NCBI RefSeq assembly: GCF_002571385.2
Contig: NW_019218304.1
Location: 91,665-155,664, forward strand
Length of the DNA stretch: 64,000 nt
Direction: 5' to 3'
From: Stylophora pistillata
Lineage: Eukaryota
The notes beneath the pieces are model-generated. The model had not been told where the DNA came from, searched no databases, and saw nothing but the letters and a program-made list of their open reading frames with translations. Of this stretch, positions 25,189 through 59,610 are shown one piece after another. Position numbers and translations under genes: made by a program. Position 1 is the first letter of the stretch. Each line of letters begins with the position of its first letter.

Positions 25189-28100
25189 TAGACTCCATGT
25201 TGTCGTGCGCCTGTTCAGTTATAAATCAAAGATGACGTAAAAATGTGGTAAAAAAAAAAAAAAAAAAATCACAAGAAGCGCCGCCAAGTGTTCCACTGAT
25301 GGTCTCACCGCATTTTGACATCTTCTGTGATCTCTTGATGTAGATACTCACGGCAACATGGAATCCAAATTTTTGATATGATAGGAGAAGAAAAATTTGT
25401 TGTCAATGATGACGCCCGTGTCCTCCCGGAGATCACAGGTATAAACCAATACGTACATAATTAAACGTAGCGTAGAAATGGGATTTAAAACTAACTAAAT
25501 GAATACAAATTAATATCTATGAACAAAGGAAGGAGCTTTGCGTAATCCCTCAAATTATTTATTTACGCTGAATTACTTAACATCACTTCATATTTATATC
25601 AATAAAAAAATAACTTCTTTTAACTTCACATTTTTCCCTTTCAACTCTGCACATAAATCAAAGCTATGAAACATACATCTCAGCTAAGTGCCTACGCTCG
25701 TGGCAAATAAATTAAACATCATTTTCAAAAACAATGAATTCCAAATTACGTCGCACAACTATTGTGTTGATTATTAATGAATACATCATACTAACTGTGT
25801 AAAACGGATTAACTTAACAAGCTATGGCGTCACTGAAAGTATTTTGATTAGTTTGTATATTCTCCATAATGTTGTCCACACCGTACCTACTGTGCTGACT
25901 CAGAGAAATCGTTTAACAATCAAGAGCTACTTAGGCTGGTGATCATTTCTTTTATTCTCTTGACCTTAATGTGTGATTCAGGGGTGATATTGTAAGGAGA
26001 AATTAGATATTAGGCACCCTTAGGGGTTAACCCTGTTTTCACCGCAGAAGAAGACATTCTAGCAAACACGACTTTCCTATTTCTTTATGGGGGAGGTAAT
26101 TTGAATCGTATATCAGATACAAACCTATCTGGCCGTGAGAAAGTCCTTGGTTATTTTGAAAATATTGCGGAACGAAGAACCACGTCATTACGTTGTTCAG
26201 TTTCCTTAGCAGAGGAAAGAAACGCTTTACCTTTTTCATACAGTTTACGAAACTATTCTTAAAGTAGATGTTATCTGTTTTTGGTTTCACACCATTACGG
26301 TTGTAATCTATCATCATCGTCATCGTCGTCGCTATCGTCATCATCAATGTTATCATCACAGCCATTAATATCGTCATCGCCATAGTCGTCGTTACCATGA
26401 TCATCATCGTTTTCGTTATTGTCATCATTATCGTCATCATCATCATTGTCATCGCTATCATCGTCATCATTGTTATCGTCATCGTTATCAATATTGCCAT
26501 CGTCATGACTATCGTCGTCATTATTGTTATCGTCATCGTCATCGCCACCATCGTAATCATCATCAACTTCGTCATTGTCATCGTCATCATTTTTGCTCTC
26601 TCCCTTTTTTGTCCAGAATTAAGTGCACAGGTTCTGTCTCCTTTAGTTGACATTATACGATTATCTACCATTATCTTGCTCTAATTTTTCCATTTTCTTA
26701 AGAATAAAGTACCTGAGTTCAGTCGCTGATAATCGAACTTACACTGGTCTTAGCCTTTCAGTCACGAAAAGAAAAAATCACTAACCACCGTAATTCTAAC
26801 CGCTGAAACGATCAAAATTTCGGTGATAGGACTAGGTGACTACAACGCGATTTCAAGAAATTCGATTCTGGGAGGTCTCTTAGTGAACAATGATTTTTGT
26901 ATTAGGATGACGTGTTTACATCCTTGCTACCATCCAGTTCAGATCACGCGTTAGTTACAACTAATGAGTTTGCTCATATTCCGTACAATTGGCTGTGTGT
27001 GAGAGACTTTTGAAGTCTAGCCCCCGCGTATGAATCGACACATGATTTGAATGAACGATAACAGGGATATAAACAGGTTGACCGACCCAATCTATTAACT
27101 CAATTGTACAACATTTTTACGTAATTTCTAAAACAGAAAAATAATGAATGTAAAAAGTCAAAGTCATTGCCCAAACCTACTTCTCTCTTAAGAGTTCAAC
27201 TCAAAGCTTTCTGCGCTTCTTAAGTTTTGTTCAGTGTTCTTTGTTAATTTTCTCTTTTGTCTACACTAATATAGAGTTTGTTTTGTTTTCTTTTAGGTTT
27301 TTTTTTTTTTTTTGGTACACTAGTTTGTGTGTGTATTTGTATTTTGCCTTGTTCTTGTTCGTCGAGTTTAGCCGCGAGGTCTCAAAACTTTGAAGATTTC
27401 TTTCAAGAAGTTTTTCCATTCTATCCCGATTGAAATAGACCTTTTGGTGCTCAAAATGAAAACACAATATACTAAATAATAATTGTGTCGAAAATATAAG
27501 CATGCAGCTCTTTTAAGCGACGAAGTCAGTTTTGGAGTTGAAAACAAAACTGAGTTTTCTGACTTCAACTGAGTTTTTGTGAAGTTGGTTAACTTTTCAT
27601 TGGAACGGTAAATATAAAGCTTCGTTTTTCCAACGGTTGATATCATTTTTAAGTGTTTTAAAATATTTCCTTTGGGAGATTTTGATTTTAAATCGTACAA
27701 TTTCAGAATTTTCAACAATTTTAACACAAACCTACGTAAATTTCCAGCTGTGAATTCTGAGCCGAAAATTTACAATGCTTTGAATACAGATTTAGTCTCA
27801 AATATTTCATGGTCGTTTTTGCCTTGTTCTCTATTCCTAGTTTTCGGGTAGAACACGATTACCTGGTAAACCCGAAACAGTTGACATAAGCTCTTCTTTT
27901 TCGTGCACACCTTGTGTTTGCATGCTATGCTATAAAAGAATTGGTTAACGCTTTAGCTGTGTTCGTATATCGAGTTATGGATGTCAAATTGATTACGTGC
28001 ATGCTTGAGAACTGTAGTGAACTTTTAGAAAAAATTTACGCATATAGCGCTCTTAAATTAGGGAACTTAAGAAAATAAAACTACTTTGAATAAATACAGC

Positions 28101-28925
28101 TTTGTCCATCACTAAACACAGACACACCTTCTCCTTCTTCGAAGTCACATTACCAAGCACTTGTCTTTGGAAGATTTCGATATCGAGGAGCTGCTGGGAG
28201 TTGACCAGTGGTGTGGCACACCAGACGTGTTTGTTGATGACGAATAATTTCTTGACGTTCCTGTGCTTGAGGTGTGCGATGAATATGTTGAACTATGAGA
28301 GCTTGCCGTACCCGAAGAGTAGCTCATGGCTGTACTGCGGTGCGGTGCGCCAAACGAGCTGTTAGAAGCTGAACCAAAACCACTCGATGCCCCACTACTG
28401 GACGAGTAATAACTACTGGTAGGATTAACGGAGCTTCTAGATGGCGCAGCTCGGCTATAAGAAGGTGTCTGAGCGGAACTTGGTGCTCCGCGAGCTCCGG
28501 AATTCCTACTACTTTCATCAGAATACTCGATGATGTACTCTGGGTAGAACTGGTCAGCGTCAAAAACCACATAAATGGTTGGACTGTACTGGTCGTCCAC
28601 ACAAGAGTCGAACAGGTCACTCGATGGGTTGGATGGTTGCTTTGGAGGCGGTCTCCGATAACTGGAGTTGCCTTTAGTGTAAGATCCAACAAGAACTTTT
28701 GCCAAGAACATGAACTGAAACGAATTCGCGTCTTTCTTCGCATAAGCATCGCTGTAGGAGGCATTTACAGCGAAATAACTTCCCTCGCCATAGACAGTGG
28801 CGTTCTTGCCGTTTAGGCGCCAGTCAAAGTTTTGCTTACATATGGCCTCCACAGCATCGGGGCTGGTTCCATGGAACAACCTCTTTTCGTTCAAAGAGTG
28901 ACTACCTCTCTTGATCGCTAACATG
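25189..28925. repeat. Copy 1 of a ~3.7-kb segmental duplication (PARP-B last exon and 3' flank)
   Basis: Colinear with 52571-56251, including a shared MITE, the ATC-rich tract and the terminal PARP exon. Confidence 0.9.
26308..26590. repeat. Degenerate (ATC/GTC)n trinucleotide repeat
   Basis: catcatcgtcatcgtcgtc...; it explains the low-complexity ORFs 26039-26671 and 26397-26684. Confidence 0.9.
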
Positions 28926-31900
28926 TTTTCCTTTTTCCTTTAAAGAAAAAGCGGACAAAAACAAGGCTTCAGGTCAAGAATGTGGTACATCTACCCAACT
29001 ACTGAGGTGAATATATTGTTCTAGTATGTATATATATATATATCTATAAACAAACAAAATAAAGCAAGAAAAGTTTACTTTAACATTATTTCTGCGACGA
29101 TTAGAATATTGTCGGGCGTAAATGCTTGGAGGTAAAAAGAAAAGGATATTCAAAGCGTGCCTTAAGCGCTATTCACTGTTTTAGTATATACTTAATGCCT
29201 TTATCAAGTACATGTAAGTGGAAAATTCCAGCTCTTATTTTCAGAAAAAAAAAAAGATGACAGAACTAAACGCTTACACTAATTTTCGTCTTATGGACAT
29301 AAGTGTTTATTCAGTCAACAGCACGAAATGAGCCAGCGGTCATTTGAGAGTCCTTAACTTTTTAACCCTTAAGAGTGATTAGCATCGAATTTCTCCTTAC
29401 AATATCACCCCTGAATCACACGTTATGGTCACGAGAATAAGGCAAATGATTATTAACTAGAGAAGCTCTTGATTGTTGAACAAATTCTCCTTACAAGCAC
29501 TTAAGGAAATGTATCGAGAACAGTGTGGAGAATAAGCAAACTGATCTTAGGGTCAAAGGTTTAATGAAAGCCATATTAACTCAGCTGTTCAATTACAAGT
29601 ACCTGGTTGCGAATGTGGCAGCATTAAAAAAAAAAAAAAGAAACTTCCGCACAAGACAAGCCTAGAGAAAGCTTTTTGAGATCAATTACCCGTTGCATTT
29701 TGAAATTGAGACCTTCTTCAATTCTTTGGAAATATCGAAATAATCATCTCTTTATATTAACAAAATACCTTTGATACTTCTCCCACATAAAAGAGTTTTG
29801 CACGCGCTCAATTCTACGGATAACGACCCTCTTTTGGATTGAACTTCTAAACAATCTCTCCACTTCTTTGTACTCAGCTGTAACATTGCTTAATGCTACA
29901 CGTGTGTACTGCATATTAACTGGCATAGAGGCCCAATTGCTGGGCTTTCCAGTACTCGATACAGTTGCACTCGTTTTTCCCTTTCTGGATGACCTGCGGC
30001 GAAAAAGGTGAAAAAAAAAAAAAAAACATATGTAAGACAGACATAGCCAAGAATTCAAGCGTAAGTAATGAACCTACCACAACTTTACAGTTATCTGTGC
30101 ATTTTTTTGTTAAGCGACCTTAATGTCCCTCGTTTCCTTGGGAACCATCAAGAAAAAGGGTAATTCAACACAGCGCGAGCATCAAAAGAACAGAACGAGA
30201 ATTTTGTTGAGTCGAACCGCTCCGAGATATTCTGATATTCTGGCGTTCTTGGTTTTACTACCCGCCCCAGACCAGGCCAACATGGCACGTTCTCTGAAAA
30301 GCCACTTCCCTCTCTTCATGCAGTAAACATTGAATACGTGATTAAACACTGTACCTCGTTCCTTTTCTTTTCGATTGAATTACTTCAGTTTAGGTGTGTT
30401 ACCTTACGAATAGGCTACATTACCATTTTTAGAAATTCAGAAATGTAGTCCAATCTTTCGTAAAAAAAAAAAAAAAGGTGCCGTATTGCACCCTCTCCAC
30501 ACTCCCTTAGCCTCAGAGGTGGCCATTGCGAAAGTTTTGACTGTATATTGAAATTACCTTCTAATCTCCCGGACGTCTGCGCTTGATCTAAATTCTGCTG
30601 GTCTTCTTCTTACTTGTCGTGTAGTGCCATACCTCAAGTTTTCTTGTCGCATTTCATGAAAATTCAGTGCATAGTCTTGTTCGGCAATTTTAAACTTAAA
30701 ACAATTTGTGGTGGATGAGAAGGCGTCTTCTATGGGTCTCTGAAGATCGTTACCCTGAAAATATACAAAAATTTTAAATTAGTTATAAATAGTCTTCAGG
30801 AACCCTTGCGGACGCCGCTTCATCCTGATTTGTTTGTTTATACATATATGTTTTCTTTTCATTCTTTTTTTCTTAACGATGTGATCGAAATAACGTTTTC
30901 TAAAGAGTCTACGTCTTAATAAGTCCAAAAACAAAGCTTAAAAAGCCCAATGAGCTTGTTAAATTATTTTCCTCAGTACTACTTTCTTTTGGCATGTTTT
31001 CCATTTCACCCAGAAGTGGCACCTGACATTAAATTTAAGTGAGTCTTACCAAGTAGTCTGAGCCATACGCCAGCCACATGCCATTTTCGTCCTTCCAGTA
31101 CCAAGTCCACGTTGATGCCAAAGGATTACCAAGATTATCGATGGAGGGTTCCGTGTAGAGCCGCCTAATGTCTGCCAAGACTTCAAAATCTTTCTGCACA
31201 AACATCATTTTATTTTCAAACAGGAAATTCACAGGATCCTCTTCATCAAAGAAAAAGAATTCTTCACTGAAAAAGTAGATTTTATGTTAACAAGGATCTG
31301 TGTGCCAATTCAATAACATGAACTTCCGGGTACATGATTTAACAGCTTCCTTATTACTGGCTCCTTTCAATAAGGAATTGGCATCTAGAACAGTATTTTA
31401 AAACATAAACTAAACTAGTGGATCAGTCTTAATCTAAACATAAGGGGCTTGTCAATAAAGGTCTTTTAAATGGATGAGATGAAAGATTGTACCTACACGA
31501 TTTAACAGAACGGATAGCTCAGAATGCCTGAATAACTAAGGTTACAAGGAAGTGAGCTTGTAAACCCACATTTTTAGACTTAAGCCTGTATAAATAGTTT
31601 AGGCTTGCCTCTGCAAACTGAAGTACTCTGTGTTTAAACGACTCTTCTCAACTCACCTTTCGAAAGACAGCTGGAGGCCAGTGGCTGAGCAATCATCCAT
31701 CATTGCGTCACAGTACAATTTCTCTACCTTCTCATTGTCAGTCTCGGTAAAACTCTTCCAGACTCCTTCACCCTCAACTCTGTATTGCCAGTGGTAAGGC
31801 AACGAACAGTGGTGCCCTGAACACTTCATGCCCTTCTTACACTTTCCCAGAAGGAAATCCGAACAGATAGGTGCATCTGGCTTATCACTGTGAACATGAC

Positions 31901-34900
31901 CTGTGAAAATGAAAACAGCAGTGTGACTGATGAAGAAGTTGCGAGATATGACTGAGCATATTTTCGGACTGATATTGCCACAGGATCATCGATTAATGCA
32001 ATACCTTTCTGTTGTCTTACAATGACCACAGATGGAAAATCATTGTAAAAAAAGCTGCTCATGACAAATAAAATTCAAGCAAGTGTAACTTTGCACTAAT
32101 ACTGTATCACAAATATTGCTAAATACATGTGCACAATCAAACTTGCGCTTTCTTGGTAAAAAATACCTGTTTCTCTGCTCTGTGCCAAATCGTCAAACAG
32201 CAAAATAGCCTTCTTCACTGCGCCTGGTTTCAAGTGATCGATTCGAAAACGCTCCAGAATTGCTCTGGTGTGATCAGTAGTCATGGCTGATTCATGCTCT
32301 AAGAGACAACCGCGTCCTTCTCGGGAACACTTTTTTAAGTGGTTGCTACACATGTGAATTCTAGGACAAGCATCGCCACGATCGCAGATACCATCGTTAT
32401 ACTCTACACAAATCAATGGCGAGGAAGACAGCACAAGCCGGCGAAGTTGCTCGTCTGTGAACTTTTCGAGGTTGATCTGAGACAGCAAAGCCTTATCCTT
32501 CTCGTTGCAAAATTGATGATTCCGAGGGCATGTTGCTCCGTTAGCACAGGAGTCAGTGATGTAATCTCTACAGATGTGCAAGAATGAGCAGTTGTCTTTC
32601 GCACAAGTTCCATAGTGGGCGTTGTTGTAACTGAAGCAGAGCCGAGCCTTTGCTGCAAACGCACTCACTTCTGTAATTTTCCCGTCTGGGTTTTCCAAGA
32701 TCAGAAAGCTCCCTTTTCTTTTACGAAACCAAGATTCCACGTCTTTGAATCCAGCAGGAAACAAATCAGTACGTTTAGAAATAACTGAAAACGTAACTGA
32801 GCAATTGTATTCCTTGCACAAGCACTCAAAGACTTTTCGTTCAGATGGTTCACCGCTGTTCCCAGAGGGAAAGATTTCTTTACGAATAGACCCAATCACA
32901 TTGGCTATATGATCAGATGGGTCACAAATGGCAATACCAGTAAGAGGTGAATGACCACTCCGCTGATAGCTAATGTTTTTGCTACCAGTTGCTCCTTTAG
33001 TCATAGTCGAGGGACTTGTCGTTGACACAGTGCTGGTTGTTTTGGCTACAGAAACAGATGTAAGTGAGAAATGGCTGGGACCACTCTGTTTCTTCTCTCC
33101 CTTGCTGTCAACTGCACTGATAGAAGACGACGTACTAGTTGCTGTTGAAATAGTGTCTTTAACAGGGGGGTTAATGTCGACTGAATGTTTCCTCTCGCAG
33201 ACCAGAAGGGCTCGCACAACTGGCTGAGTGTTACCATTCCTGACCTTCAAGCCATATCTATTGAGAACAGCGGTTGCATGAGCCGTCAGTAGAGCTTCTT
33301 CGTGCTCGAGACCGCAAATCGCCTGATCCGCACACTTCTTTCTTATCATATTCTTGCAAATATGTATCTTTCCACAACTCTCTCCAAGTACACAGTGTCC
33401 TTCGTTATAGTCAAGACATACTCGAGGTATTGACAGTTGAACGACCTTACGCAGCTGTTCTTCACTAAAGTCAGTTAACTTAAGTTTAGAAATGAACTTT
33501 CTGCTCTTATCGTACTCAAAACTGTGGTTTCTTTGACATCTACGGCCAAATCTACAAAACCCAGCAATGTAATCTCGGCACACGTGTATATAAGAGCATT
33601 CCTCTTTAGAGCAATGATCCTGGTTAAAACATAATTTTGCTCGTTGACAATGAACGTCCACTTTTACTGTTCCGTCTTCACTTTCCCTAAACAGAAAGCT
33701 TTCTTTCCTTGATTTGAACCATGCAGCGATATCTCCACATCCTTCAGGAAACAATTCTTTTTGTTTCGAGATAACAAGGAAAGGGACAGTACCATTGTAT
33801 TCTTTCAGAATGCAGTCAAACACTGCCTTCTTAGAGGGTGTGTTCTTTTGTGGATCTGGAACAGAGCTGCACGAACTTGAAATGGATGACTTTCGCTTGC
33901 GTTCCGCTGGTGTTTCTTCATTTTGAGAGTTTCTAGGGCTATGAGTGGAATCAGACGAATAATCATTTCCCAAGACCCATTTCTTTACCAAATCGTTTCC
34001 GCTATCATCAACGGGCAAAACGAACGGATCATTACGTACAGCGCTGGCTTTTCCTGCCCCACTTGAAATACAGAGATCCGCCTTTGGTTTCATTTGTGAC
34101 GTGGTTTTGGGTTTAAGAAATTTGCAATCATTTCCAGTCCCTTTGTTGCTTAGTTTTGACTCGTGAATCTGATGAAGCGATCGACTTTCATTCGCAGAGA
34201 GGAAGTTTTTAGAATCAGGTTTGTTGTCTTCTGAAGATGAGTCTGAGAGGCTTTCTTCCTCCTCGTGTATATTTAGAAACCCGGGATGTTTGTTAGAGCC
34301 CGCTGAAGCAGTCGCACAACTCGCCAAGTTGTTGTCGTACTTTGGTATACCCTTCTGTTTCCGCTCTTCCTTTGACTTTAACTGGTCAGGTTTTGGTCCA
34401 TTCCTCCTCGTGTCCACACTATCATTAGAAACCTCTCTGGATTTTGAGCCCGTATGATAATCGTTTGTTCCACCCGAGTTCGACTTGTGGCTTGCCCCAT
34501 GCTGTAAACTGTTTTCGTTTGTGTTATTCTGATTGACAAATTTTGTTAATTCTTCGGCTGGCGTAACCGAGGCCATTTCAACGGTAGTATCATCGCTTAT
34601 GAACTTGCCTTTGTCAAAATAACTCTGCTCTTTCATGATCAAAATACTGCTACAAACAAAGGCAGTGCTCATCGACTGATGTGGCACAAGGTCATACTGC
34701 TTCAGTATTTTCTTGTTGTTAACTTCAGTCAGATTATGCAATAGCCCACAACCACAGGGCAATTTTCGCACTACGTTCGGGCAAATATGAAGATATGGAC
34801 ATTTATCCGACTTACATTTATTTCTCAAATACAACTGACAAACCTGTGGTAGACTCCAGGCGATGATGTTCCGTAATGTTCCATTCGGGTGCTTCTCGAT

Positions 34901-35287
34901 TTTAAGGTCTTTGGTCTTCGCTTCGTTGTCGTTGTCGAAGAAATTGTGCGAACGATGGCAATTACCTTCGCAATTTCCCTCGATGTAGCTTTTACAAATG
35001 TGCCAGAATTTACATGAACCCCTTGTTCTTCTGCACGAACCTCGTTCAAGGTATTGTTGACAAATTTTCTTTTTCAGGTCGATGCGAACACCTCTGACTT
35101 CATCATCAATATCTTTCACCACAACAAAGCGGCCACGGCCGTGATTAATTAGCCAATTCTTCGCATCCAAGTTAGATTTAATGTCTTTCAAAGGCGATGA
35201 ATCCCTCAAAAGTAACGATAACTCTACAAATCCGCCACTACCACAAATAAAATTGAAAACTTTCTCGACCGAAACATCAGTCGCCAT
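28145..35287 (-). CDS. PARP12: PARP-B: ZAP/PARP12-like mono-ADP-ribosyltransferase with 3x (winged helix + 4 CCCH), CCCH, WWE, WWE, PARP, Ser-rich tail and CaaX; about 1598 aa
   Basis: Exons 35287-32167, 31900-31657, 31266-31050, 30754-30558, 29993-29769 and 28937-28145, all GT-AG, 4797 nt open frame, starting MATDVSVEKVFNF. Motifs: ICSDFLLGKCKKGMKCSGHH, LPYHWQY, WTWYWKDENG, VRRRP, LFHGT, NFDWRLNGKNATVYGEGSYF, PTIYVVF..QFYPEY. It ends KSSKDKCLVM*. The symbol indicates family only. Confidence 0.92.
29362..29563. mobile_element. piggyBac-like MITE in PARP-B intron 5
   Basis: Runs from ttaacccttaagagtgattagc to agggtcaaaggtttaa; same family as 7290-7502. Confidence 0.7.
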
Positions 35288-52570: not shown

Positions 52571-55500
52571 ATAGATTCCATGTTGCTGTGCGCCAGTTCA
52601 ATTTTAAATCAGAAATAACGTCAAAATGTGATAAAAACACAAAAAATGGCACAAGAGGCGCAGCCAAGAGTTCCACTGATGGTCTTACCACATTTTGGCA
52701 TCTTCAGTGATCTCTTAAGGTAGATACTCACGGTAGCATGACTCTATATTGTTGATATGATAGAAGAAGAAAAATGTTGTTAATGATGACGCCAACTATG
52801 CCTTTTTCCTCTAATAGCTCGTAAGTAACAACCAATCGAAATGTATCCATTATTCAGCCCATTTAACTAGATGAGTACAAATAAATATCATTCTGTGAAC
52901 AAATGCAGAAGCTTTGCGTAATCCCTCAAATTATTTATTTACGATAGATTATTTAACATAATTAAAAGGATATATTTTAACTTTCTATTTTTTCTTTATG
53001 CACATGAATGAAACACATTGAAAATACATCTCGAGGCATAAAAAAAAAATTAACATCATTCTCAAAAACAATGAATTCAGCATTGCATCTCACAACTATT
53101 GTGTTGAGTTTTAGTGATTAAATCATACTGATTGTGTAAAATGGATTACCTTAACAAGCCAGGACGTCACTTAATGTATTTTCTTTGACCCCGTTTGCAC
53201 CACAGAAGGAAACTTTCTAGAAAATACGACATTTTTGTTTCGGCATAACCAGGGTAATTTGGATCGTATATCAAATACAAACCTTGTTCGTTTCGTTATT
53301 TTGAAAATATACCTTTAAACGTTGTCCCCTTTCCATAACGAAGAAAGGTGACGAATTAGCTTTTTTAAAGAGGTTAAGAAACCATTCTTTGAGTTAATGT
53401 TATTATTTGCTTTCGTGTCGAAAGTTATCATCCGTCACCATCGTCATCGTCGTCGCTATCGTCATCATCATTGTTATCGTCATCGTCATCAACATCGTTA
53501 TCGTCACCGCCATGGTCATCATCATTTTTATCGTCATTGTCATCTACATCGTCGTCATCATCGCTATTGTCATAATTCTTTTTATAGTCATCGTCATCGT
53601 CGTCGTTATCATTATCAACGTCGTCATCGTCATCGACATCATCATCATTTTTACTCCCAATGTTCCTTTCTTTGTCAAGAATAAAGTGCATAGATTCTGT
53701 CTCTTTGAGTTGACATTATTATTTGTTTTATCATTATTACGATTATCTGTCATTTTTATCCACATCATTATCGTAATCGTCATCATGTTATCATTATCAT
53801 CATCATCATCATTATTGTTGAACTCATTTTTCCTTTTTCGGAAGAAATGAAGTACCTGAGTTCTGTCGCTGATAATTGAACTTAAACTGGTCTTAGCCTT
53901 TCACTTACATCCACGAAAAAGAAGAAAGAAAAGAAGAAATTCAATTCTGGGAAGTCTCTCAGTGAATAATGATTTATGTATATGAATAACATGTTTACAT
54001 CCTTGCTATCATCCATTTCAAAACATGCGTTAATTTATTGAGGCAATTAAAACTACAGCTTTTTTCATATTCCCTACACTCGGCTGCGTTTGGGAATTGG
54101 TAAATTCCAGCCTCCTCTTTTGATTTTGATGAACGATAACAGGAATATAAACAGGTCGATCGACACAATCTGTTCATTGAATTGTACAGCAATTTACGTA
54201 ATTTCTGAGAAAAAATATAAGTTATGTTATTGCCCAAACCCAATTCTCTCTTTTAAAGAGTTCAACCTCAAGCTTTCTGCGCTTCTTAAGGTTTGTTTAC
54301 TCTTCTTTGTTAGTTTTTCTGTTTTCTTTTTAGTCTAGAGTTTGTTCTTGTTTTCTTTTATGTTTTTTTTAATTTTTTACACTGGTTTGTGTGTGTGTGT
54401 AATTTGCCTTGCTCTTGTTCGTCGAGTTAAGCTACGAGGTTTTAAAACTTTAAAAATTGTTTTTTTATTCTATACCGATCGAAATCGACCTTTTGGGGCT
54501 CAAAATGAAAAGAAAATATCCTGAATAATACTTTTGTCAAAAAATAAATAATAATAATAAGCCTGCAGCTCTTTCAAGCGACGAAATCAGTTTTGAAGTT
54601 GGAAACAAGAATGAGTTTTCTGACTTCAACTGAGGTTTTTCGAAGTTGGTAACTCTTCATTGGGACGGTAAATATTATTTAGAATTGTTGATATGTCTCA
54701 AATGAAAGTATTGTTCAAAGGAAGATTTTGTTTTAAAATCGTACAATTTTCAGAATTGTCAACTGACAAAGTTACGCAATTTTCTGGTGGGTAAATTCTA
54801 GTAATCACTACAAGAACAATAAATCTACCACCCGAGTCTCGCAAAGGCAAAGAAATTGCATGTTTATCGCTTCGTTTTTCAAACGGTTTATATCATTTTT
54901 AAGTGTTTTAAACTATTTCCCATAGCATATTTTGATTTTAAAGTCGTACAATTTCAGAATTTTTAAAGTGTTTAACACAAACCTACGCAAATTTCCTGCT
55001 GTGAATTCTAGTAAACAACGATTCAAAACGCTGAATGTACTACTCGGTTTCGTGCATTCAAGAAACTCGTTCGTTTTTCGCTTCTGAGCCGAAAATTTAC
55101 AATTCTTTGAATAAAGGTTTAGTCTCAAAATATTTTATGGTCGCTTTTTCCTTGTTATCTATTCCTAGTTTTAGGATAAAACACTATTACCTGGTAAACC
55201 CGACACATTTTTCATAAACTCTTCTTTTTTGTGCACAACTTGTTTCTGCATGCCATGCTACAAAAGAATTGGTTAACGCTTTAGCTGTGCGTATATCAAG
55301 TTATGATGTCAAATTGATACGTGCATGCTTGAAAACTTGAGCTTTTCGAAGAAATTTACGCCCTCAGTGCTCTTAAATTAAGGAAATCCAAGAGAATAAA
55401 CCTTCTTTCAAGAAATACAGCTTTGTACATTACTAGTAGAAACACAGACACACCTTCTCCTTCTTCGAAGTCACATTACCAAGCACTTGTTGTCACTGGA

Positions 55501-56251
55501 AGATTTCTTTGTCGAAGAGCTGCTGGGAGTTGACCTGTGGTGTGGCACGCCCGAAGTGTTCGTTGATGATGAATGATTCCCTGAAGTTCCTTTGTTTGAG
55601 GTGTGCGATGAATTTGTTGTAATAAGAGAGCTCGGAGAACAACCCGAATTGTACGGAGTGCCAGACGAGCTGTTAGAAGCTGAGCCATAAGTAATTGATG
55701 CCCCACCAGTGGATGAGTAAGTAACTACTTGTAGGATTAACTGAGCTTCTAGATGGGGTAGCTCGGCTAAAAGAAGGTGCTGCATAGGCTCCTGCCCGAG
55801 CGGAACTTGGTGCTCCGCGACCTCCAGAATACCTACTACTTTCATCAGAATACTCGATGATGTACTCTGGGTAGAACTGGTCAGCGTCAAAAACCACATA
55901 AATGGTTGGACTGTACTGGTCGTCCACACAAGAGTCGAACAGGTCACTCGATGGGTTGGATGGTTGCTTTGGAGGCGGTCTCCGATAACTGGAGTTGCCT
56001 TTAGTGTAAGATCCAACAAGAACTTTGGCCAAGAACATGAACTGAGACGAATTTGCGTCTTTCTTCGCAAAAGCATCGCTGTAGGAAGCATTTACAGCGA
56101 AATGACTTCCTTCAACATAAAGATGGGTGATCTTTCCGTTCGAGCGCCAGTCAAAGTTTTGCTTACATATTGCCTCCACAGCATCGGGGCTGGTTCCATG
56201 GAACAACCTCTTTTCGTTCAAAGAGTGACCGCCTGTCTTGACCGCCAACAT
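52571..56251. repeat. Copy 2 of the ~3.7-kb segmental duplication
   Basis: Colinear with 25189-28925. It lacks the MITE found at 25860-26030 and includes the ATC-rich tract at 53425-53815. Confidence 0.9.
55471..56251 (-). pseudogene. PARP-D: orphan copy of the PARP-B terminal exon (PARP domain and CaaX tail)
   Basis: Close to PARP-B exon 6, but the splice acceptor and first 13 nt are replaced by unrelated DNA. GSYF is changed to GSHF (NAD-binding Tyr lost), and a +1 frameshift near 55720 moves DNKCLVM* out of frame. Confidence 0.85.
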
Positions 56252-56574
56252 GAAAGCGTTATTAATAATAAGCGTTAAAATTATATTTCACATTTCGAAT
56301 GTGAACTGTTTAATCATGCCCAGGGGTGTTGGGAGCTCGCTACAAAATTGTTTATTGCCCCCAACCCAGGGGGAGAATTTTCGAAATAAAGTCGAATAAA
56401 AACCGCAATGTCCTTGGGTTTCCCAGGGGTGTCCCGGGGGTCGATTCCCGGGCAAGCCAATGATAAATGCATAAGGCACAAAAGTTCTGCAAACCTGCGG
56501 GGTGTAATGTGACTGTTAGTGTTTACCTATACAATGCAAATGAATAAAGGCTGTCATTCTGTCATTCTGTCATT

Positions 56575-57557
56575 CCTAATGGCGAAGGTCTTCTGGCCCT
56601 TAAACATTTTTTTGATCAACGTACTGTTAAGGAACCAAAATCTGAAACACTACTTTGCCTAGCCGAATTAGTGCTCACACTCAATTGTTTTTCATTCGGA
56701 GACAACTTTTTCAAACAAACCAATGGTGTGGCCATGGGTACCAAAATGGGACCTAGCTATGCCAATCTTTTTGCAGGTTTTGTCGAACACCAACTTTTCA
56801 GCCAATACAACGGCTCCAAACCTGAACTCTACGGTCACTACATCGACGTATCTGCGCCACCTCCTCTACCAGACAGGAGCTGACTCAATTTATAACCGCA
56901 GTCAATTCTTTTCACCCGGCTCTGAAATATACCCGGGAAATTTCTGACAATTCTTTATCCCTTTTAGGCATCAAAGTTTCAATTGAAGGCAACGGTTTAT
57001 GCACTAGTGTGTATTACAAACTTACACACTCGCATAATTACTTGTTGTATTCGTCTTCGCATCCATCTCACGTTAAGAATTTCATTCCTTTTTCTCAGTT
57101 TCTAGGACTTCGTCGTTTACGTTGTGATGACTCTGATTTCCACCACAAATCAGAGTCAATGTGCCAGTTTTTCGATAAACGTGACTACCCTGATTCTGTC
57201 GTTCAAGCGGGTTACCAACGCGCCCAACTCAGTTATTGATCAACATTCAGCACTACAAACGTCGCAAAAGGAAGATTCCGACCGCATTCCATTCACTCTC
57301 ACGCTTCACCCTCACAACCACTCAGATAAATCCATCATTCTTAAAAACTTTAAATTAATTCAAAACGATCCAGATACAAGCACTATCTTTTCGCAGCGTC
57401 CGCTCATTTCATTCAAACGCGACAAAATTAAAACATAGGCAATTTTTTGGTCAGAAGTTCTTTTCAGACTAATGACCAACCAGGCACTTTTAAATGCGCT
57501 CGTGCACGATGCAAAACGTGTCCTTTCATTCACAACACTGAGGAAACATCGGGACCC
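56575..57557 (+). mobile_element. Penelope-like retroelement fragment (RT and linker), degenerate, runs into an assembly gap
   Basis: Encodes VLTLNCFSFGDNFFKQTNGVAMGTKMGPSYANLF, YIDV, VYYKLTHSHNYLLYSSSHP, IPFSQFLGLRRL and CARARCKTCPFI, with several frameshifts. Confidence 0.9.
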
Positions 57558-59610
57558 NNNNNNNNNNNNNNNNNNNNNNNNNNNNNNNNNNNNNNNNNNN
57601 NNNNNNNNNNNNNNNNNNNNNNNNNNNNNNNNNNNNNNNNNNNNNNNNNNNNNNNNNNNNNNNNNNNNNNNNNNNNNNNNNNNNNNNNNNNNNNNNNNNN
57701 NNNNNNNNNNNNNNNNNNNNNNNNNNNNNNNNNNNNNNNNNNNNNNNNNNNNNNNNNNNNNNNNNNNNNNNNNNNNNNNNNNNNNNNNNNNNNNNNNNNN
57801 NNNNNNNNNNNNNNNNNNNNNNNNNNNNNNNNNNNNNNNNNNNNNNNNNNNNNNNNNNNNNNNNNNNNNNNNNNNNNNNNNNNNNNNNNNNNNNNNNNNN
57901 NNNNNNNNNNNNNNNNNNNNNNNNNNNNNNNNNNNNNNNNNNNNNNNNNNNNNNNNNNNNNNNNNNNNNNNNNNNNNNNNNNNNNNNNNNNNNNNNNNNN
58001 NNNNNNNNNNNNNNNNNNNNNNNNNNNNNNNNNNNNNNNNNNNNNNNNNNNNNNNNNNNNNNNNNNNNNNNNNNNNNNNNNNNNNNNNNNNNNNNNNNNN
58101 NNNNNNNNNNNNNNNNNNNNNNNNNNNNNNNNNNNNNNNNNNNNNNNNNNNNNNNNNNNNNNNNNNNNNNNNNNNNNNNNNNNNNNNNNNNNNNNNNNNN
58201 NNNNNNNNNNNNNNNNNNNNNNNNNNNNNNNNNNNNNNNNNNNNNNNNNNNNNNNNNNNNNNNNNNNNNNNNNNNNNNNNNNNNNNNNNNNNNNNNNNNN
58301 NNNNNNNNNNNNNNNNNNNNNNNNNNNNNNNNNNNNNNNNNNNNNNNNNNNNNNNNNNNNNNNNNNNNNNNNNNNNNNNNNNNNNNNNNNNNNNNNNNNN
58401 NNNNNNNNNNNGGTCAATTTACCTGATTTTCCAGAGGGTTAAGACGTTTTTTATTTCATAGAAATACTGTATTTTTCCTTTGGAAATTCCAGAGGGGTGG
58501 GGGTGGTCCTTTGGACAATTCCTTCCGTGTTGGGGGTATGGATATTTCTGGAATTGCACATTTCATGAATTTCGTGATTAAAACAATTGTGAAAATTACA
58601 TGATGGGCAAATTAATTTCAAGACTTTGTAGTGAAAGCATGTCAAATGTTTTTTGCAGAAGCGTAGAAATAAAGAGTTTCAACATATTGCCATCCAAAAA
58701 TCGCGAAATTTTGGTGTTGCAGAAAGGAAGTGTAATAAAGTATGAACACAGATACATTTTGCAATACAAGACCACTGCAAATAATAGAGCTAGACACGGC
58801 AAGCATACTAACCGGTGCTAGCAATTTTGCTCCATTTGATATTCTAACATTTCCCATTGCCAAAGTGTTTAAAGTTCAGTTCTTCCAAAAGAGTTAACTC
58901 CTCCAAGCAAAAGCGGGCATATATTAAAGTGTACCTCAATGCTTGGATTTATAATTACTTATTTAATCGTTCTTTTCCGAATAAGAAAGAACACTGTTTA
59001 TTAGACATCAATAGCTCCTTTGACGCAATTTTTTCACTGCAGTAAACACCCGCAGATAAGAGCACATGGATTAAGAACAACAGGCTTAAATTTGACAATT
59101 AAAGCACCACTTTTATAAGAACAAAACCAACCTGGAAATATAAGATGTTCTTATAAAATGGAGAAGGCATAAAAAATTATAGAAAATGTGTGCCTGCTGC
59201 CAGAAATTCACAGCTCTATCAGCTGTCATGTTGTCTTGTATCTGTTTATGCATGCTAATTGTTACATTATTGTCAATTTGTTCTATTATTAATCCCAAAT
59301 ATATGCTCAACCAACACTTTTTGCATAGTTACAGTTCTGTGTTCCAAAAAGAAAATTAAGAACAATTTAAGAACATCTTGAGGCTGATTTTTCACTAAGT
59401 ACCCGATAAATAAGATCCTAATCAGCCTAATATAACTACCAAAATCGTGTGTTCTTATATGCCGGTGTTTACTGTATTCAAGATTTTTTCAATATCACCA
59501 TTACAGGTATTTTTGTATTTTTATAACTTATGTAGTATTTCAGCAATCTGTAATGATAAATTACCGAAAAAAAAAAAACCTGGCACCAAAGGTATTACCA
59601 TGGCAACACC

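What the first reader, a model, noticed from the sequence alone, without database searches (positions are those of the whole stretch)
28145..28520. ZAP-L-like CaaX prenylation signal on a catalytically intact invertebrate PARP
Seen: after the PARP domain comes a ~120-aa Ser-rich tail ending KSSKDKCLVM*, and the diverged duplicate keeps DNKCLVM*. Known: CaaX with X=Met specifies farnesylation. Mammalian ZAP-L ends in CVIS, and its farnesylation directs endolysosomal localisation and antiviral potency, but its PARP domain is inactive. PARP-B keeps H-Y-I. Inference: either an ancestral active, prenylated ZAP-like state or convergence on the same solution.
Basis: partly seen in the sequence, partly recalled or inferred. 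Interest (0 to 1): 0.75.

Follow-up and report, generated by a model that had tools for sequence, protein, structure and literature searches.

The report
Lipid-anchor signal on coral PARP12-like enzyme
A coral relative of the antiviral proteins PARP12 and ZAP ends in a signal for attaching a membrane-anchoring lipid, and the same ending turns up in related proteins from corals to fish, so this anchoring may be much older than the literature I read suggests.

Summary
The core observation holds. The minus-strand ORF 28145-28924 encodes the C-terminal half of a PARP catalytic domain. Its H, Y and I align with human PARP12. A 123-residue tail follows (38% Ser, predicted disordered) and ends KSSKDKCLVM*. 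RNA contigs from three runs cover the whole terminal exon without a splice in the tail. One contig links it to the WWE exons and to a 1041-codon CCCH zinc-finger exon.

The second copy (55471-56252) does not support the finding. It duplicates only the last exon and its 3' flank. A 1-nt insertion puts its CLVM out of frame with the PARP domain, and its catalytic Tyr is His.

The motif is not a one-off:
- 63 of 150 representative relatives end in CaaX, against 0.56% of internal 4-mers. Among those with tails over 100 aa it is 52 of 71.
- Named carriers include Porites, Montipora, Acropora, Oculina, Nematostella, Clytia, Ptychodera, starfish, bivalves, Lingula, ray-finned-fish PARP12 and amphibian, turtle and bird ZAP-like proteins.

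A 2025 paper places the CaaX gain in tetrapods, and I found no paper on CaaX in fish or invertebrate PARP12. Whether the motif dates to the cnidarian-bilaterian ancestor depends on the model: likelihood says yes, equal-weight parsimony says no by one step. Prenylation itself is untested. The scan had not noted this before on other DNA.

The parts
28148..28159 (-). CaaX box: Cys256-Leu-Val-Met259; stop codon at 28145-28147
   Evidence: No variant listed at these codons among the 40 of 101 variant rows shown for the four runs.
28160..28516 (-). Ser-rich disordered linker. With the CaaX it makes a 123-aa tail. The last 10 residues before the Cys hold three Lys and one Asp.
   Evidence: Composition. 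In the AlphaFold2 model, 10-residue block means of pLDDT from residue 151 on are 36-47 (58 for 141-150), with no secondary structure after residue 139. Two tail variants in RNA contigs are non-synonymous (I248T, W240R) and one is synonymous.
28517..28937 (-). 5' part of the terminal exon: C-terminal two thirds of the PARP catalytic domain, with H18 (28871-28873), Y50 (28775-28777) and I117 (28574-28576)
   Evidence: Pfam PF00644; alignment to human PARP12 2pqf; coordinates; AG acceptor at 28938-28939.
27400..28144 (-). 3'UTR, at least 745 nt; it runs beyond the stretch that was laid
   Evidence: RNA contigs X1 record 1 and X3 record 7. No AATAAA or ATTAAA in 27301-28144.
29769..29993 (-). Exon encoding the N-terminal third of the PARP domain
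   Evidence: Joints; GT..AG; aligns to PARP15 and PARP12 chains, E 5e-4 to 1e-3.
30558..30754 (-). Linker exon
   Evidence: Joints in X1, X3 and X5; open frame.
31050..31266 (-). Exon matching the WWE-region exons of the neighbouring paralogues (no Pfam hit of its own)
   Evidence: Joints. tblastn matches to the equivalent exons of PARP-A and PARP-C. Pfam found no family at E 0.01 or better for ORF 31035-31232.
31657..31900 (-). WWE exon
   Evidence: Pfam WWE_4 (E 2.5e-5) and WWE (E 1.7e-4); joints.
32167..35287 (-). Large exon (1041 codons from the ATG at 35287) with repeated PARP12-type CCCH zinc-finger modules
   Evidence: Pfam zf-CCCH_PARP12, 28.8 bits against a cut-off of 27; internal repeats and similarity to PARP-A; open frame; RNA contigs.
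55471..56252 (-). Copy B: truncated, frameshifted duplicate of the terminal exon, probably a pseudogene fragment. Its CLVM codons are 55474-55485.

Best explanation
PARP-B is an expressed six-exon gene of 1598 codons for a PARP12/ZAP-family protein. It has repeated CCCH zinc-finger modules, a WWE region, a PARP domain with the mono-ADP-ribosyltransferase triad H-Y-I, a flexible Ser-rich linker of about 120 residues, and a C-terminal CaaX box (CLVM). The most likely mechanism has three steps. Protein farnesyltransferase farnesylates Cys256, because X = Met directs to that enzyme. The -LVM tripeptide is then cleaved and the new C-terminus is methylated. The lipid, helped weakly by three nearby lysines, tethers the protein to the cytosolic face of membranes, while the long linker leaves the RNA-binding and catalytic domains free near the membrane. 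Shown here: the sequence, its transcription, the intact frame, conservation of the motif in orthologues, and wide occurrence of the 'tail + basic patch + CaaX' module in the family. Inferred: that prenylation happens, which membrane is targeted, and any antiviral role.
For: The motif and the tail lie in one ORF. The terminal exon is contiguous in RNA contigs of three runs, and one contig (X3 record 7) links the CCCH exon to the 3'UTR. All five introns are GT..AG, and every exon is open in its implied phase. The catalytic residues align with human PARP12. The tail is predicted disordered, which CaaX recognition needs. An 82%-identical relative keeps ...KENKCLVM in frame. The N-terminal-exon search found 10 hits with a PARP domain, and 6 end in CaaX: Porites CLVM, Montipora CSVM, CSIM and CLVS, Oculina CSVM, Nematostella CSVM. 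Family-wide, 63 of 150, 48 of 75 and 91 of 120 hits end in CaaX, against 0.56% of internal 4-mers. CaaX goes with the tail: 52 of 71 with tails over 100 aa, but 3 of 48 with tails of 15 aa or less. A second membrane signal is common: 41 of 63 CaaX ends have three or more K/R in the 10 residues before the Cys, and K peaks at positions -7 to -9. The genome has prenyltransferase-beta-like sequence at three loci and an ICMT locus.
Against: No prenylation predictor or experiment was available, and no paper pairs CLVM with farnesylation (0 hits). PARP-B's own basic patch is weak (three Lys and one Asp in the last 10 residues). None of the other 28 paralogue terminal exons examined in this genome has a CaaX, so the motif is not needed for PARP function in general. 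Copy B gives no support. The query included the Ser-rich tail, which may have enriched for tailed hits. The query itself ends in CaaX and drew mostly close vertebrate relatives. My CaaX rule (C; a1 not DEKRPNQHWY; a2 in AVILMFCSTG; any X) is permissive. Only 40 of 101 variant rows were shown, so a variant inside the CaaX codons cannot be ruled out.
Confidence: 0.8

Rival explanations
1. The motif works, but it arose independently several times. On this view the coral clade, hemichordates, echinoderms, molluscs and vertebrates each gained a CaaX at the end of a fast-evolving disordered tail, and the likeness to ZAP-L is convergence.
For: Equal-weight parsimony prefers absence at the node joining the coral clade and vertebrates in 855 of 926 bootstrap trees (10 against 11 steps). 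Using only proteins with the canonical CCCH-WWE-PARP architecture, it prefers absence in 651 of 941 trees (6 against 7 steps). On the 198-row FastTree the equal-rates model gives only 0.31 for presence at the root. A four-residue motif at the end of a disordered tail is easy to gain. Branchiostoma PARP12 lacks it, and human PARP12 lacks it according to passages of PMC8568172. In ZAP-type proteins the CaaX sits about 10 residues after the PARP domain, not after a long tail.
Against: The parsimony margin is one step and reverses once a gain costs 1.5-2 times a loss. Likelihood models give presence at the root: 0.81-0.86 (equal rates) and about 1.0 (unequal rates, gain rate near 0) on the 66-row trees, and 0.98 and about 1.0 on the canonical subset. 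The whole module is shared across phyla (Ser-rich tail, K-rich patch at -7 to -9, CaaX). Ray-finned-fish PARP12 (Polypterus, sturgeon, paddlefish, many teleosts) has the long-tail form, and the vertebrate ancestor is never reconstructed as lacking it.
Confidence: 0.35
2. The CaaX-like ending is present but not used. Either the protein is not prenylated in coral cells, or a shorter isoform without the tail predominates, as ZAP-S does in mammals.
For: There are no experimental data. The basic patch is weak. Contigs cannot show isoform ratios (tool note). A PARP-less paralogue or partial model made only of CCCH modules exists (P0360).
Against: The Cys at -4 is kept in an otherwise fast-changing tail across stony-coral genera and beyond. 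The ancestor of the coral clade is reconstructed with CaaX in 926 of 926 bootstrap trees. RNA depth is flat across the terminal exon in the three contig runs.
Confidence: 0.12
3. Gene-model artefact: the tail is untranslated read-through or an assembly error, and the true stop lies just after the PARP domain.
For: Low-complexity Ser-rich sequence keeps more than one frame open: ORF 28324-28764 is open in another frame.
Against: There is no stop between the PARP domain and CLVM. Three RNA runs show the same contiguous sequence with no insertion or deletion in 27400-28936 (table 4). Relatives in many species keep a tail in frame that ends in CaaX.
Confidence: 0.03

Closest known systems
Mammalian ZAP-L (ZC3HAV1 long isoform, PARP13)
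   Same: CCCH zinc fingers, WWE region, PARP domain and a C-terminal CaaX. In ZAP-L, farnesylation of the CaaX Cys gives membrane and vesicle localisation and is needed for antiviral activity (PMC8568172: abstract and passages read).
   Different: The ZAP-L PARP domain is catalytically inactive and departs from the triad (PMC8568172 passage), whereas PARP-B keeps H-Y-I. ZAP-type proteins carry the CaaX about 10 residues after the domain, whereas PARP-B has a 119-residue linker. No HTH_53 domain was found in PARP-B's N-terminal exon. PARP-B has repeated CCCH modules and lies outside the vertebrate PARP12/ZAP clade.
Human PARP12 (ARTD12)
   Same: It is the best solved-structure match to the catalytic domain (2pqf, E 1e-38), with H, Y and I aligned. 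It has a PARP12-type CCCH Pfam hit and a WWE domain. Human PARP12 is a mono-ADP-ribosyltransferase acting at the Golgi (PMC8740581 and PMC5656619: titles and abstract starts in a search listing only).
   Different: Human PARP12 has no CaaX (PMC8568172 passage), and its solved catalytic-domain construct stops a few residues after the domain.
Ray-finned-fish PARP12 as annotated in RefSeq (e.g. Polypterus P0328, Polyodon P0334, Carassius P0203, Ictalurus P0359)
   Same: Same order of parts: CCCH, WWE, PARP, then a Ser/Pro-rich tail with a short basic patch and a CaaX (CLVS, CTIS, CVIS, CVIC).
   Different: These are vertebrate lineage genes with a single CCCH module set and shorter proteins (677-1074 aa). 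I found no paper describing their CaaX.
K-Ras4B-type membrane anchors (polybasic stretch plus farnesylated CaaX ending in Met)
   Same: Cys-aliphatic-aliphatic-Met preceded by lysines at the end of a flexible region. Many family members have strong KKKK patches. The K-Ras comparison is recalled, not computed.
   Different: PARP-B's own patch is weak (net about +2). The cargo is a 1598-residue RNA-binding enzyme, not a small GTPase.

Membership tests
CaaX prenylation substrates | Cys exactly four residues from the C-terminus | tested here: met
   ...KDKCLVM* with the stop at 28145-28147
CaaX prenylation substrates | Aliphatic a1 and a2, and an X residue that selects the enzyme (Met, Ser, Gln, Ala or Cys for farnesyltransferase) | tested here: met
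   a1 = Leu, a2 = Val, X = Met. The rule linking X to the enzyme is established knowledge, recalled.
CaaX prenylation substrates | Flexible, accessible region upstream of the Cys | tested here: met
   Tail block-mean pLDDT 36-47 from residue 151 on, with no secondary structure after residue 139; 72% S/T/G/A/P/N
CaaX prenylation substrates | Modifying enzymes encoded in the genome | tested here: met
   Pfam Prenyltrans (beta subunit) over the cut-off at three loci and ICMT at one locus. The farnesyltransferase beta subunit was not told apart from the other two prenyltransferases. The alpha subunit and RCE1 were not searched.
CaaX prenylation substrates | Prenyl group demonstrated on the protein | not testable with these tools
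   Needs metabolic labelling or mass spectrometry.
PARP12/ZAP family (CCCH-WWE-PARP) | PARP12-type CCCH zinc fingers at the N-terminus | tested here: met
   PF25261, 28.8 bits against a cut-off of 27, in exon 32167-35287. The best full-length hit by this exon is Porites lutea P0184, which has PF25261, WWE and PARP.
PARP12/ZAP family (CCCH-WWE-PARP) | WWE domain between the fingers and the PARP domain | tested here: met
   PF23466 and PF02825 hits in ORF 31653-31829
PARP12/ZAP family (CCCH-WWE-PARP) | C-terminal PARP catalytic domain closest to PARP12 | tested here: met
   PF00644, E 4.9e-20. PDB ranking: PARP12, then PARP15, PARP14, ZAP and PARP10.
PARP12/ZAP family (CCCH-WWE-PARP) | All parts lie on one transcript | tested here: met
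   X3 record 7 (2837 nt) lies on 27400-28936, 29768-29991, 30556-30753 and 32165-32470. The 460 letters between these pieces equal the two WWE-region exons.
Active mono-ADP-ribosyltransferase PARPs (H-Y-I/L triad) | His and Tyr of the NAD+ site, and a hydrophobic third residue in place of Glu | tested here: met
   H18, Y50 and I117 align with identical residues of human PARP12. Which residues form the triad is recalled. Enzyme activity was not tested.
ZAP (ZC3HAV1) orthologue in the strict sense | Membership of the tetrapod/lungfish ZAP clade, with an HTH_53 domain and a degenerate triad | tested here: not met
   PARP-B falls in a stony-coral clade (SH-aLRT 98) outside the vertebrate clade (SH-aLRT 99). 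No PF18606 hit. The triad is intact. The clade definition comes from PMC12204182, section 5 read.

The most novel reading that the evidence does not exclude
A C-terminal lipid anchor (Ser-rich linker, basic patch, CaaX) is an ancestral module of the whole animal PARP12/ZAP family. On this reading it was already present with an active H-Y-I catalytic domain before cnidarians and bilaterians split. The CVIS of ZAP-L would then be a shortened relic rather than a tetrapod invention, and mammalian PARP12, amphioxus PARP12 and several paralogues would be secondary losses. Membrane tethering of an RNA-binding ADP-ribosyltransferase would be the original design of this immune family.
Probability: 0.55. 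Interest if true: 0.75.

Novelty: new variant of a known kind. Interest (0 to 1): 0.62.

Why it matters
[quoted passage not shown] The evolutionary account I could read says the CaaX was gained in tetrapods (PMC12204182, abstract and sections 3, 5 and 7). Here the same signal sits on a catalytically intact family member in a coral. It is also on homologues in at least five other invertebrate phyla and on ray-finned-fish PARP12.

If this holds, the membrane anchor predates ZAP, and it coexisted with enzyme activity. The open question of why ZAP needs a membrane could then be studied in simpler, active relatives. It also points to a testable localisation for a family that has expanded strongly in corals.

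Tried and rejected
Copy B as independent support: rejected. It is frameshifted and truncated, and the stretch around its CLVM is identical to copy A into the UTR. dN/dS of copy A against copy B is 0.29 for the PARP part and 0.59-0.63 for the tail, which does not separate a functional copy from a pseudogene.

Other paralogues in this genome: 30 terminal-exon loci were read and only this gene and copy B end in CLVM. Fourteen weaker matches were not read.

Ancestral state: equal-weight parsimony, weighted parsimony and two likelihood models disagree at the deep node. In the un-hand-picked 198-row FastTree the macro-domain outgroup was not monophyletic, so its root is unreliable. The 66-row set was hand-picked with the C-termini already known. 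The 13 rows dropped for the 'canonical architecture' subset are listed by name prefix.

Alignment A3, used for the fold, was chosen as 36 CaaX and 4 non-CaaX fragments. The 'nearly invariant C256' it reports is therefore by construction and is not used as evidence.

Literature: searches PARP12+CaaX (11 papers), PARP12+prenylation (10), PARP12+farnesyl (30), PRENbase+ADP-ribose (0) and CLVM+farnesyl (0) listed no paper on CaaX in fish or invertebrate PARP12. I read these as listings only. One search was badly framed, because two generic terms were enough to match, and it adds little. Supplementary table S3 of PMC12204182 and figure S3 of PMC8568172 may list PARP12 C-termini, but supplements were closed and I did not see them.

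Full report
WHAT IS THERE. On the minus strand, ORF 28145-28924 (259 aa) reads ...LFHGTS...GSYFA...PTIYVVFDADQFYPEYIIEYSD. A 123-residue tail follows and ends SISKSSKDKCLVM*. Pfam finds the PARP catalytic domain at residues 9-135 (E 4.9e-20). The best solved-structure match is the human PARP12 catalytic domain (2pqf, E 1e-38), ahead of PARP15, PARP14, ZAP and PARP10. H18, Y50 and I117 align with identical residues. That these three positions are the H-Y-I triad of mono-ADP-ribosylating PARPs is recalled knowledge. The tail is 38% Ser and 72% S/T/G/A/P/N. An AlphaFold2 model gives it 10-residue block means of pLDDT of 36-47 from residue 151 on (58 for 141-150), with no secondary structure after residue 139. 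From base composition, 123 codons without a stop have a chance of about 0.004 locally and 0.0002 window-wide.

THE GENE. RNA contigs from three runs (X1, X3, X5) cover the terminal exon from 28936 down to 27447, 27400 and 27697 with no joint and no indel. Raw reads of a fourth run (X24) also lie on it. Five joints define the introns. Placed at the equally fitting positions, all are GT..AG. The coding exons are 35287-32167, 31900-31657, 31266-31050, 30754-30558, 29993-29769 and 28937-28145. Each exon is open in the phase implied by the one before it, for 1598 codons in all. I checked this exon by exon and did not join them. One contig (X3 record 7, 2837 nt) links the CCCH exon to the 3'UTR. The large exon carries a PARP12-type CCCH hit (PF25261) and internal repeats. 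ORF 31653-31829 carries WWE hits. Exon 29769-29993 supplies the N-terminal third of the PARP domain. So the protein is a PARP12/ZAP-family member with an intact triad and a CaaX at the end of a long linker.

THE DUPLICATE. Copy B matches only 26027-28925, that is the last exon and its 3' flank. No upstream exons of a second gene were found next to it. A 1-nt insertion within 55715-55728 shifts the frame. As a result its PARP frame stops early (192-aa ORF), and DNKCLVM* lies in another frame. Its similarity to copy A stops inside the exon, so no matching splice acceptor is seen, and its catalytic Tyr is His. Retroelement-like ORFs and an assembly gap follow it. It is best read as a pseudogene fragment.

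IS THE MOTIF CONSERVED? In this genome, 30 paralogue terminal exons were read, and only PARP-B and copy B end in CLVM. The two neighbouring paralogues in the window end KSKLVC* and YVLK*.
- An unnamed 82%-identical relative (P0001) keeps the whole tail and ...KENKCLVM in frame.
- A search with the N-terminal CCCH exon alone is blind to the C-terminus. It returned 10 proteins that carry a PARP domain. Six end in CaaX: Porites lutea CLVM, Montipora foliosa CSVM, CSIM and CLVS, Oculina patagonica CSVM, and Nematostella CSVM. Two are orthologues of the neighbouring PARP-A and end K(L/V)VC. Two are truncated.
- In a tree of PARP domains, PARP-B sits in a stony-coral clade of 10 rows (SH-aLRT 98), 8 of them with CaaX. 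The two without it are nested Acropora paralogues that also lack CCCH fingers.

HOW WIDE IS IT? A full HMMER scan with the 259-aa ORF against 1.84 billion cluster representatives gave 6204 hits. Of the best 150, 63 end in CaaX by my rule.
- The rule matches only 0.56% of internal 4-mers of the same proteins.
- CaaX goes with the tail. By tail length after the PARP domain, the counts are 3 of 48 (15 aa or less), 1 of 6 (16-40), 7 of 22 (41-100) and 52 of 71 (over 100), with 147 of 150 proteins located.
- X is M in 24, Q in 15, L in 12, S in 9, and C, A and V in one each.
- 41 of 63 have three or more K/R in the 10 residues before the Cys. Non-CaaX tails over 40 aa average 0.85.
- Among the 93 tailed representatives, C is at -4 in 65%, and K peaks at -7 to -9.
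- Named carriers: Acropora palmata, Clytia hemisphaerica (CVIS), Ptychodera flava (CVLM, CTVM, CVVM), Acanthaster (CSIQ), Patiria (CTIQ), Argopecten (CVLQ), Magallana gigas (CSIQ), Lingula (CCIQ), PARP12 of Polypterus, Acipenser, Polyodon and many teleosts (CLVS, CTIS, CIIS, CVIA and others), and amphibian, turtle and bird PARP12-like or ZAP-like proteins (CCIS, CVIC, CFVS, CIVS).
- Lacking it: Branchiostoma PARP12, one Patiria paralogue, a fish paralogue group, scallop mind-bomb fusions, gastropod proteins and a crab protein.
- Biases: the and queries included a Ser-rich tail. The query ends in CaaX and drew mostly vertebrates.

ANCESTRAL OR CONVERGENT? On a 66-row tree (IQ-TREE, 1000 ultrafast bootstraps, rooted on three macro-domain PARPs), results differ by node.
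- The stony-coral clade ancestor has CaaX in 926 of the 926 trees in which the outgroup separates.
- The vertebrate PARP12/ZAP ancestor has it in 624, is tied in 302 and lacks it in 0.
- At the node joining corals and vertebrates, equal-weight parsimony prefers absence in 855 of 926 trees, by 10 steps against 11.
- With only canonical CCCH-WWE-PARP rows (52 of 66), it prefers absence in 651 of 941 trees, by 6 steps against 7.
- The margin is a single step, and it reverses once a gain costs 1.5-2 times a loss.
- Two-state likelihood models point the other way. Equal rates give 0.81-0.86 for presence at the root, and 0.98 for the canonical subset. Unequal rates fit better by 3.3-3.5 log-likelihood units on the full 66- and 198-row sets, but by only 0.45 units on the canonical subset. 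In every case they put the gain rate near zero.
- A 198-row FastTree of all rows returned gave 0.31 (equal rates) and about 1.0 (unequal rates). Its outgroup was not monophyletic.
I therefore treat deep ancestry as more likely than not (about 0.55), ancestry within stony corals as secure, and a pre-tetrapod origin in vertebrates as well supported.

WHAT THE LITERATURE SAYS.
- PMC8568172 (abstract and passages read): the ZAP-L CaaX Cys mediates S-farnesylation, membrane and vesicle localisation and antiviral activity, and human PARP12 'does not share the ... CaaX motif'.
- PMC12204182 (abstract and sections 3, 5 and 7 read): a vertebrate-only analysis concluding that the CaaX box was acquired in tetrapods, with amphibian ZAP typically lacking it. 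Its table S3 was not visible to me.
- PMC8102003 (passages read): finds ZAP/PARP12 homologues in cnidarians, oyster and octopus. It contains no occurrence of CaaX, farnesyl or prenyl.
- Five searches listed no paper on a CaaX in fish or invertebrate PARP12.
- Human PARP12 acts at the Golgi (PMC8740581 and PMC5656619, search listing only). That fits a membrane-proximal theme for the family.

MECHANISM. Shown: the motif, its transcript, its conservation, a disordered linker, and prenylation-pathway genes in the genome (prenyltransferase-beta-like sequence at three loci, ICMT at one). Inferred from established CaaX biology: farnesylation of Cys256 (X = Met), removal of -LVM, carboxymethylation, and attachment to the cytosolic face of membranes. 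With only three lysines nearby, endomembranes are more likely than the plasma membrane for this protein. Relatives with KKKK patches or extra cysteines may go elsewhere. An antiviral or RNA-surveillance role is an inference from family membership only.

VERDICT. The core observation is real, and the CaaX reading is well supported in silico. The duplicate is not evidence. The gene is a new variant of a known kind: a prenyl-anchored PARP like ZAP-L, but catalytically intact and with a long linker. The wider pattern found here is the more interesting result and needs a proper phylogenomic survey and a labelling experiment.

Noticed in passing
window 15912-16376 (+): The neighbouring paralogue PARP-A ends KTKSKLVC*. 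The Stylophora pistillata protein P0438 has the same end, and the Oculina orthologue P0436 ends KTKSKVVC*. This is a conserved basic patch with a Cys as the very last residue. It is not a CaaX, and its meaning is unknown.
   Followed up: partly
window 29370-29566 (intron of PARP-B); copies at 6722-6841, 7298-7505, 25846-25999: A short repeat with very high RNA contig depth (about 34,000 in X1 against about 90 for the exons) and many loose ends. It looks like an abundant transcribed interspersed repeat.
   Followed up: no
window 56671-57500 and 57558-58411: Reverse-transcriptase-like ORFs and an assembly gap lie directly upstream of copy B. A retroelement insertion or rearrangement may mark the edge of the partial duplication.
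   Followed up: no
P0360 (not in the window): The Stylophora pistillata protein LOC111332135 (1124 aa) is 75% identical to PARP-B's CCCH exon and has only the zf-CCCH_PARP12 Pfam domain. It is either a PARP-less, ZAP-S-like paralogue or a partial gene model.
   Followed up: no
P0072 (Ptychodera flava): The PARP domain ends at residue 864 of 1460, so a tail of about 600 residues precedes its CTVM ending. This is the longest linker seen among the named proteins.
   Followed up: no
window 26039-26684: A low-complexity stretch downstream of PARP-B is open in both strands (Met/Thr-rich and Ile/Val-rich ORFs). It is also duplicated beside copy B at 53185-53903.
   Followed up: no
L003 (G000:C94:703203-703922): Another paralogue has a Ser/Pro-rich tail of about 230 residues after its PARP domain, but ends ...GRMDL* without a CaaX. 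Whether a further exon follows was not checked.
   Followed up: no
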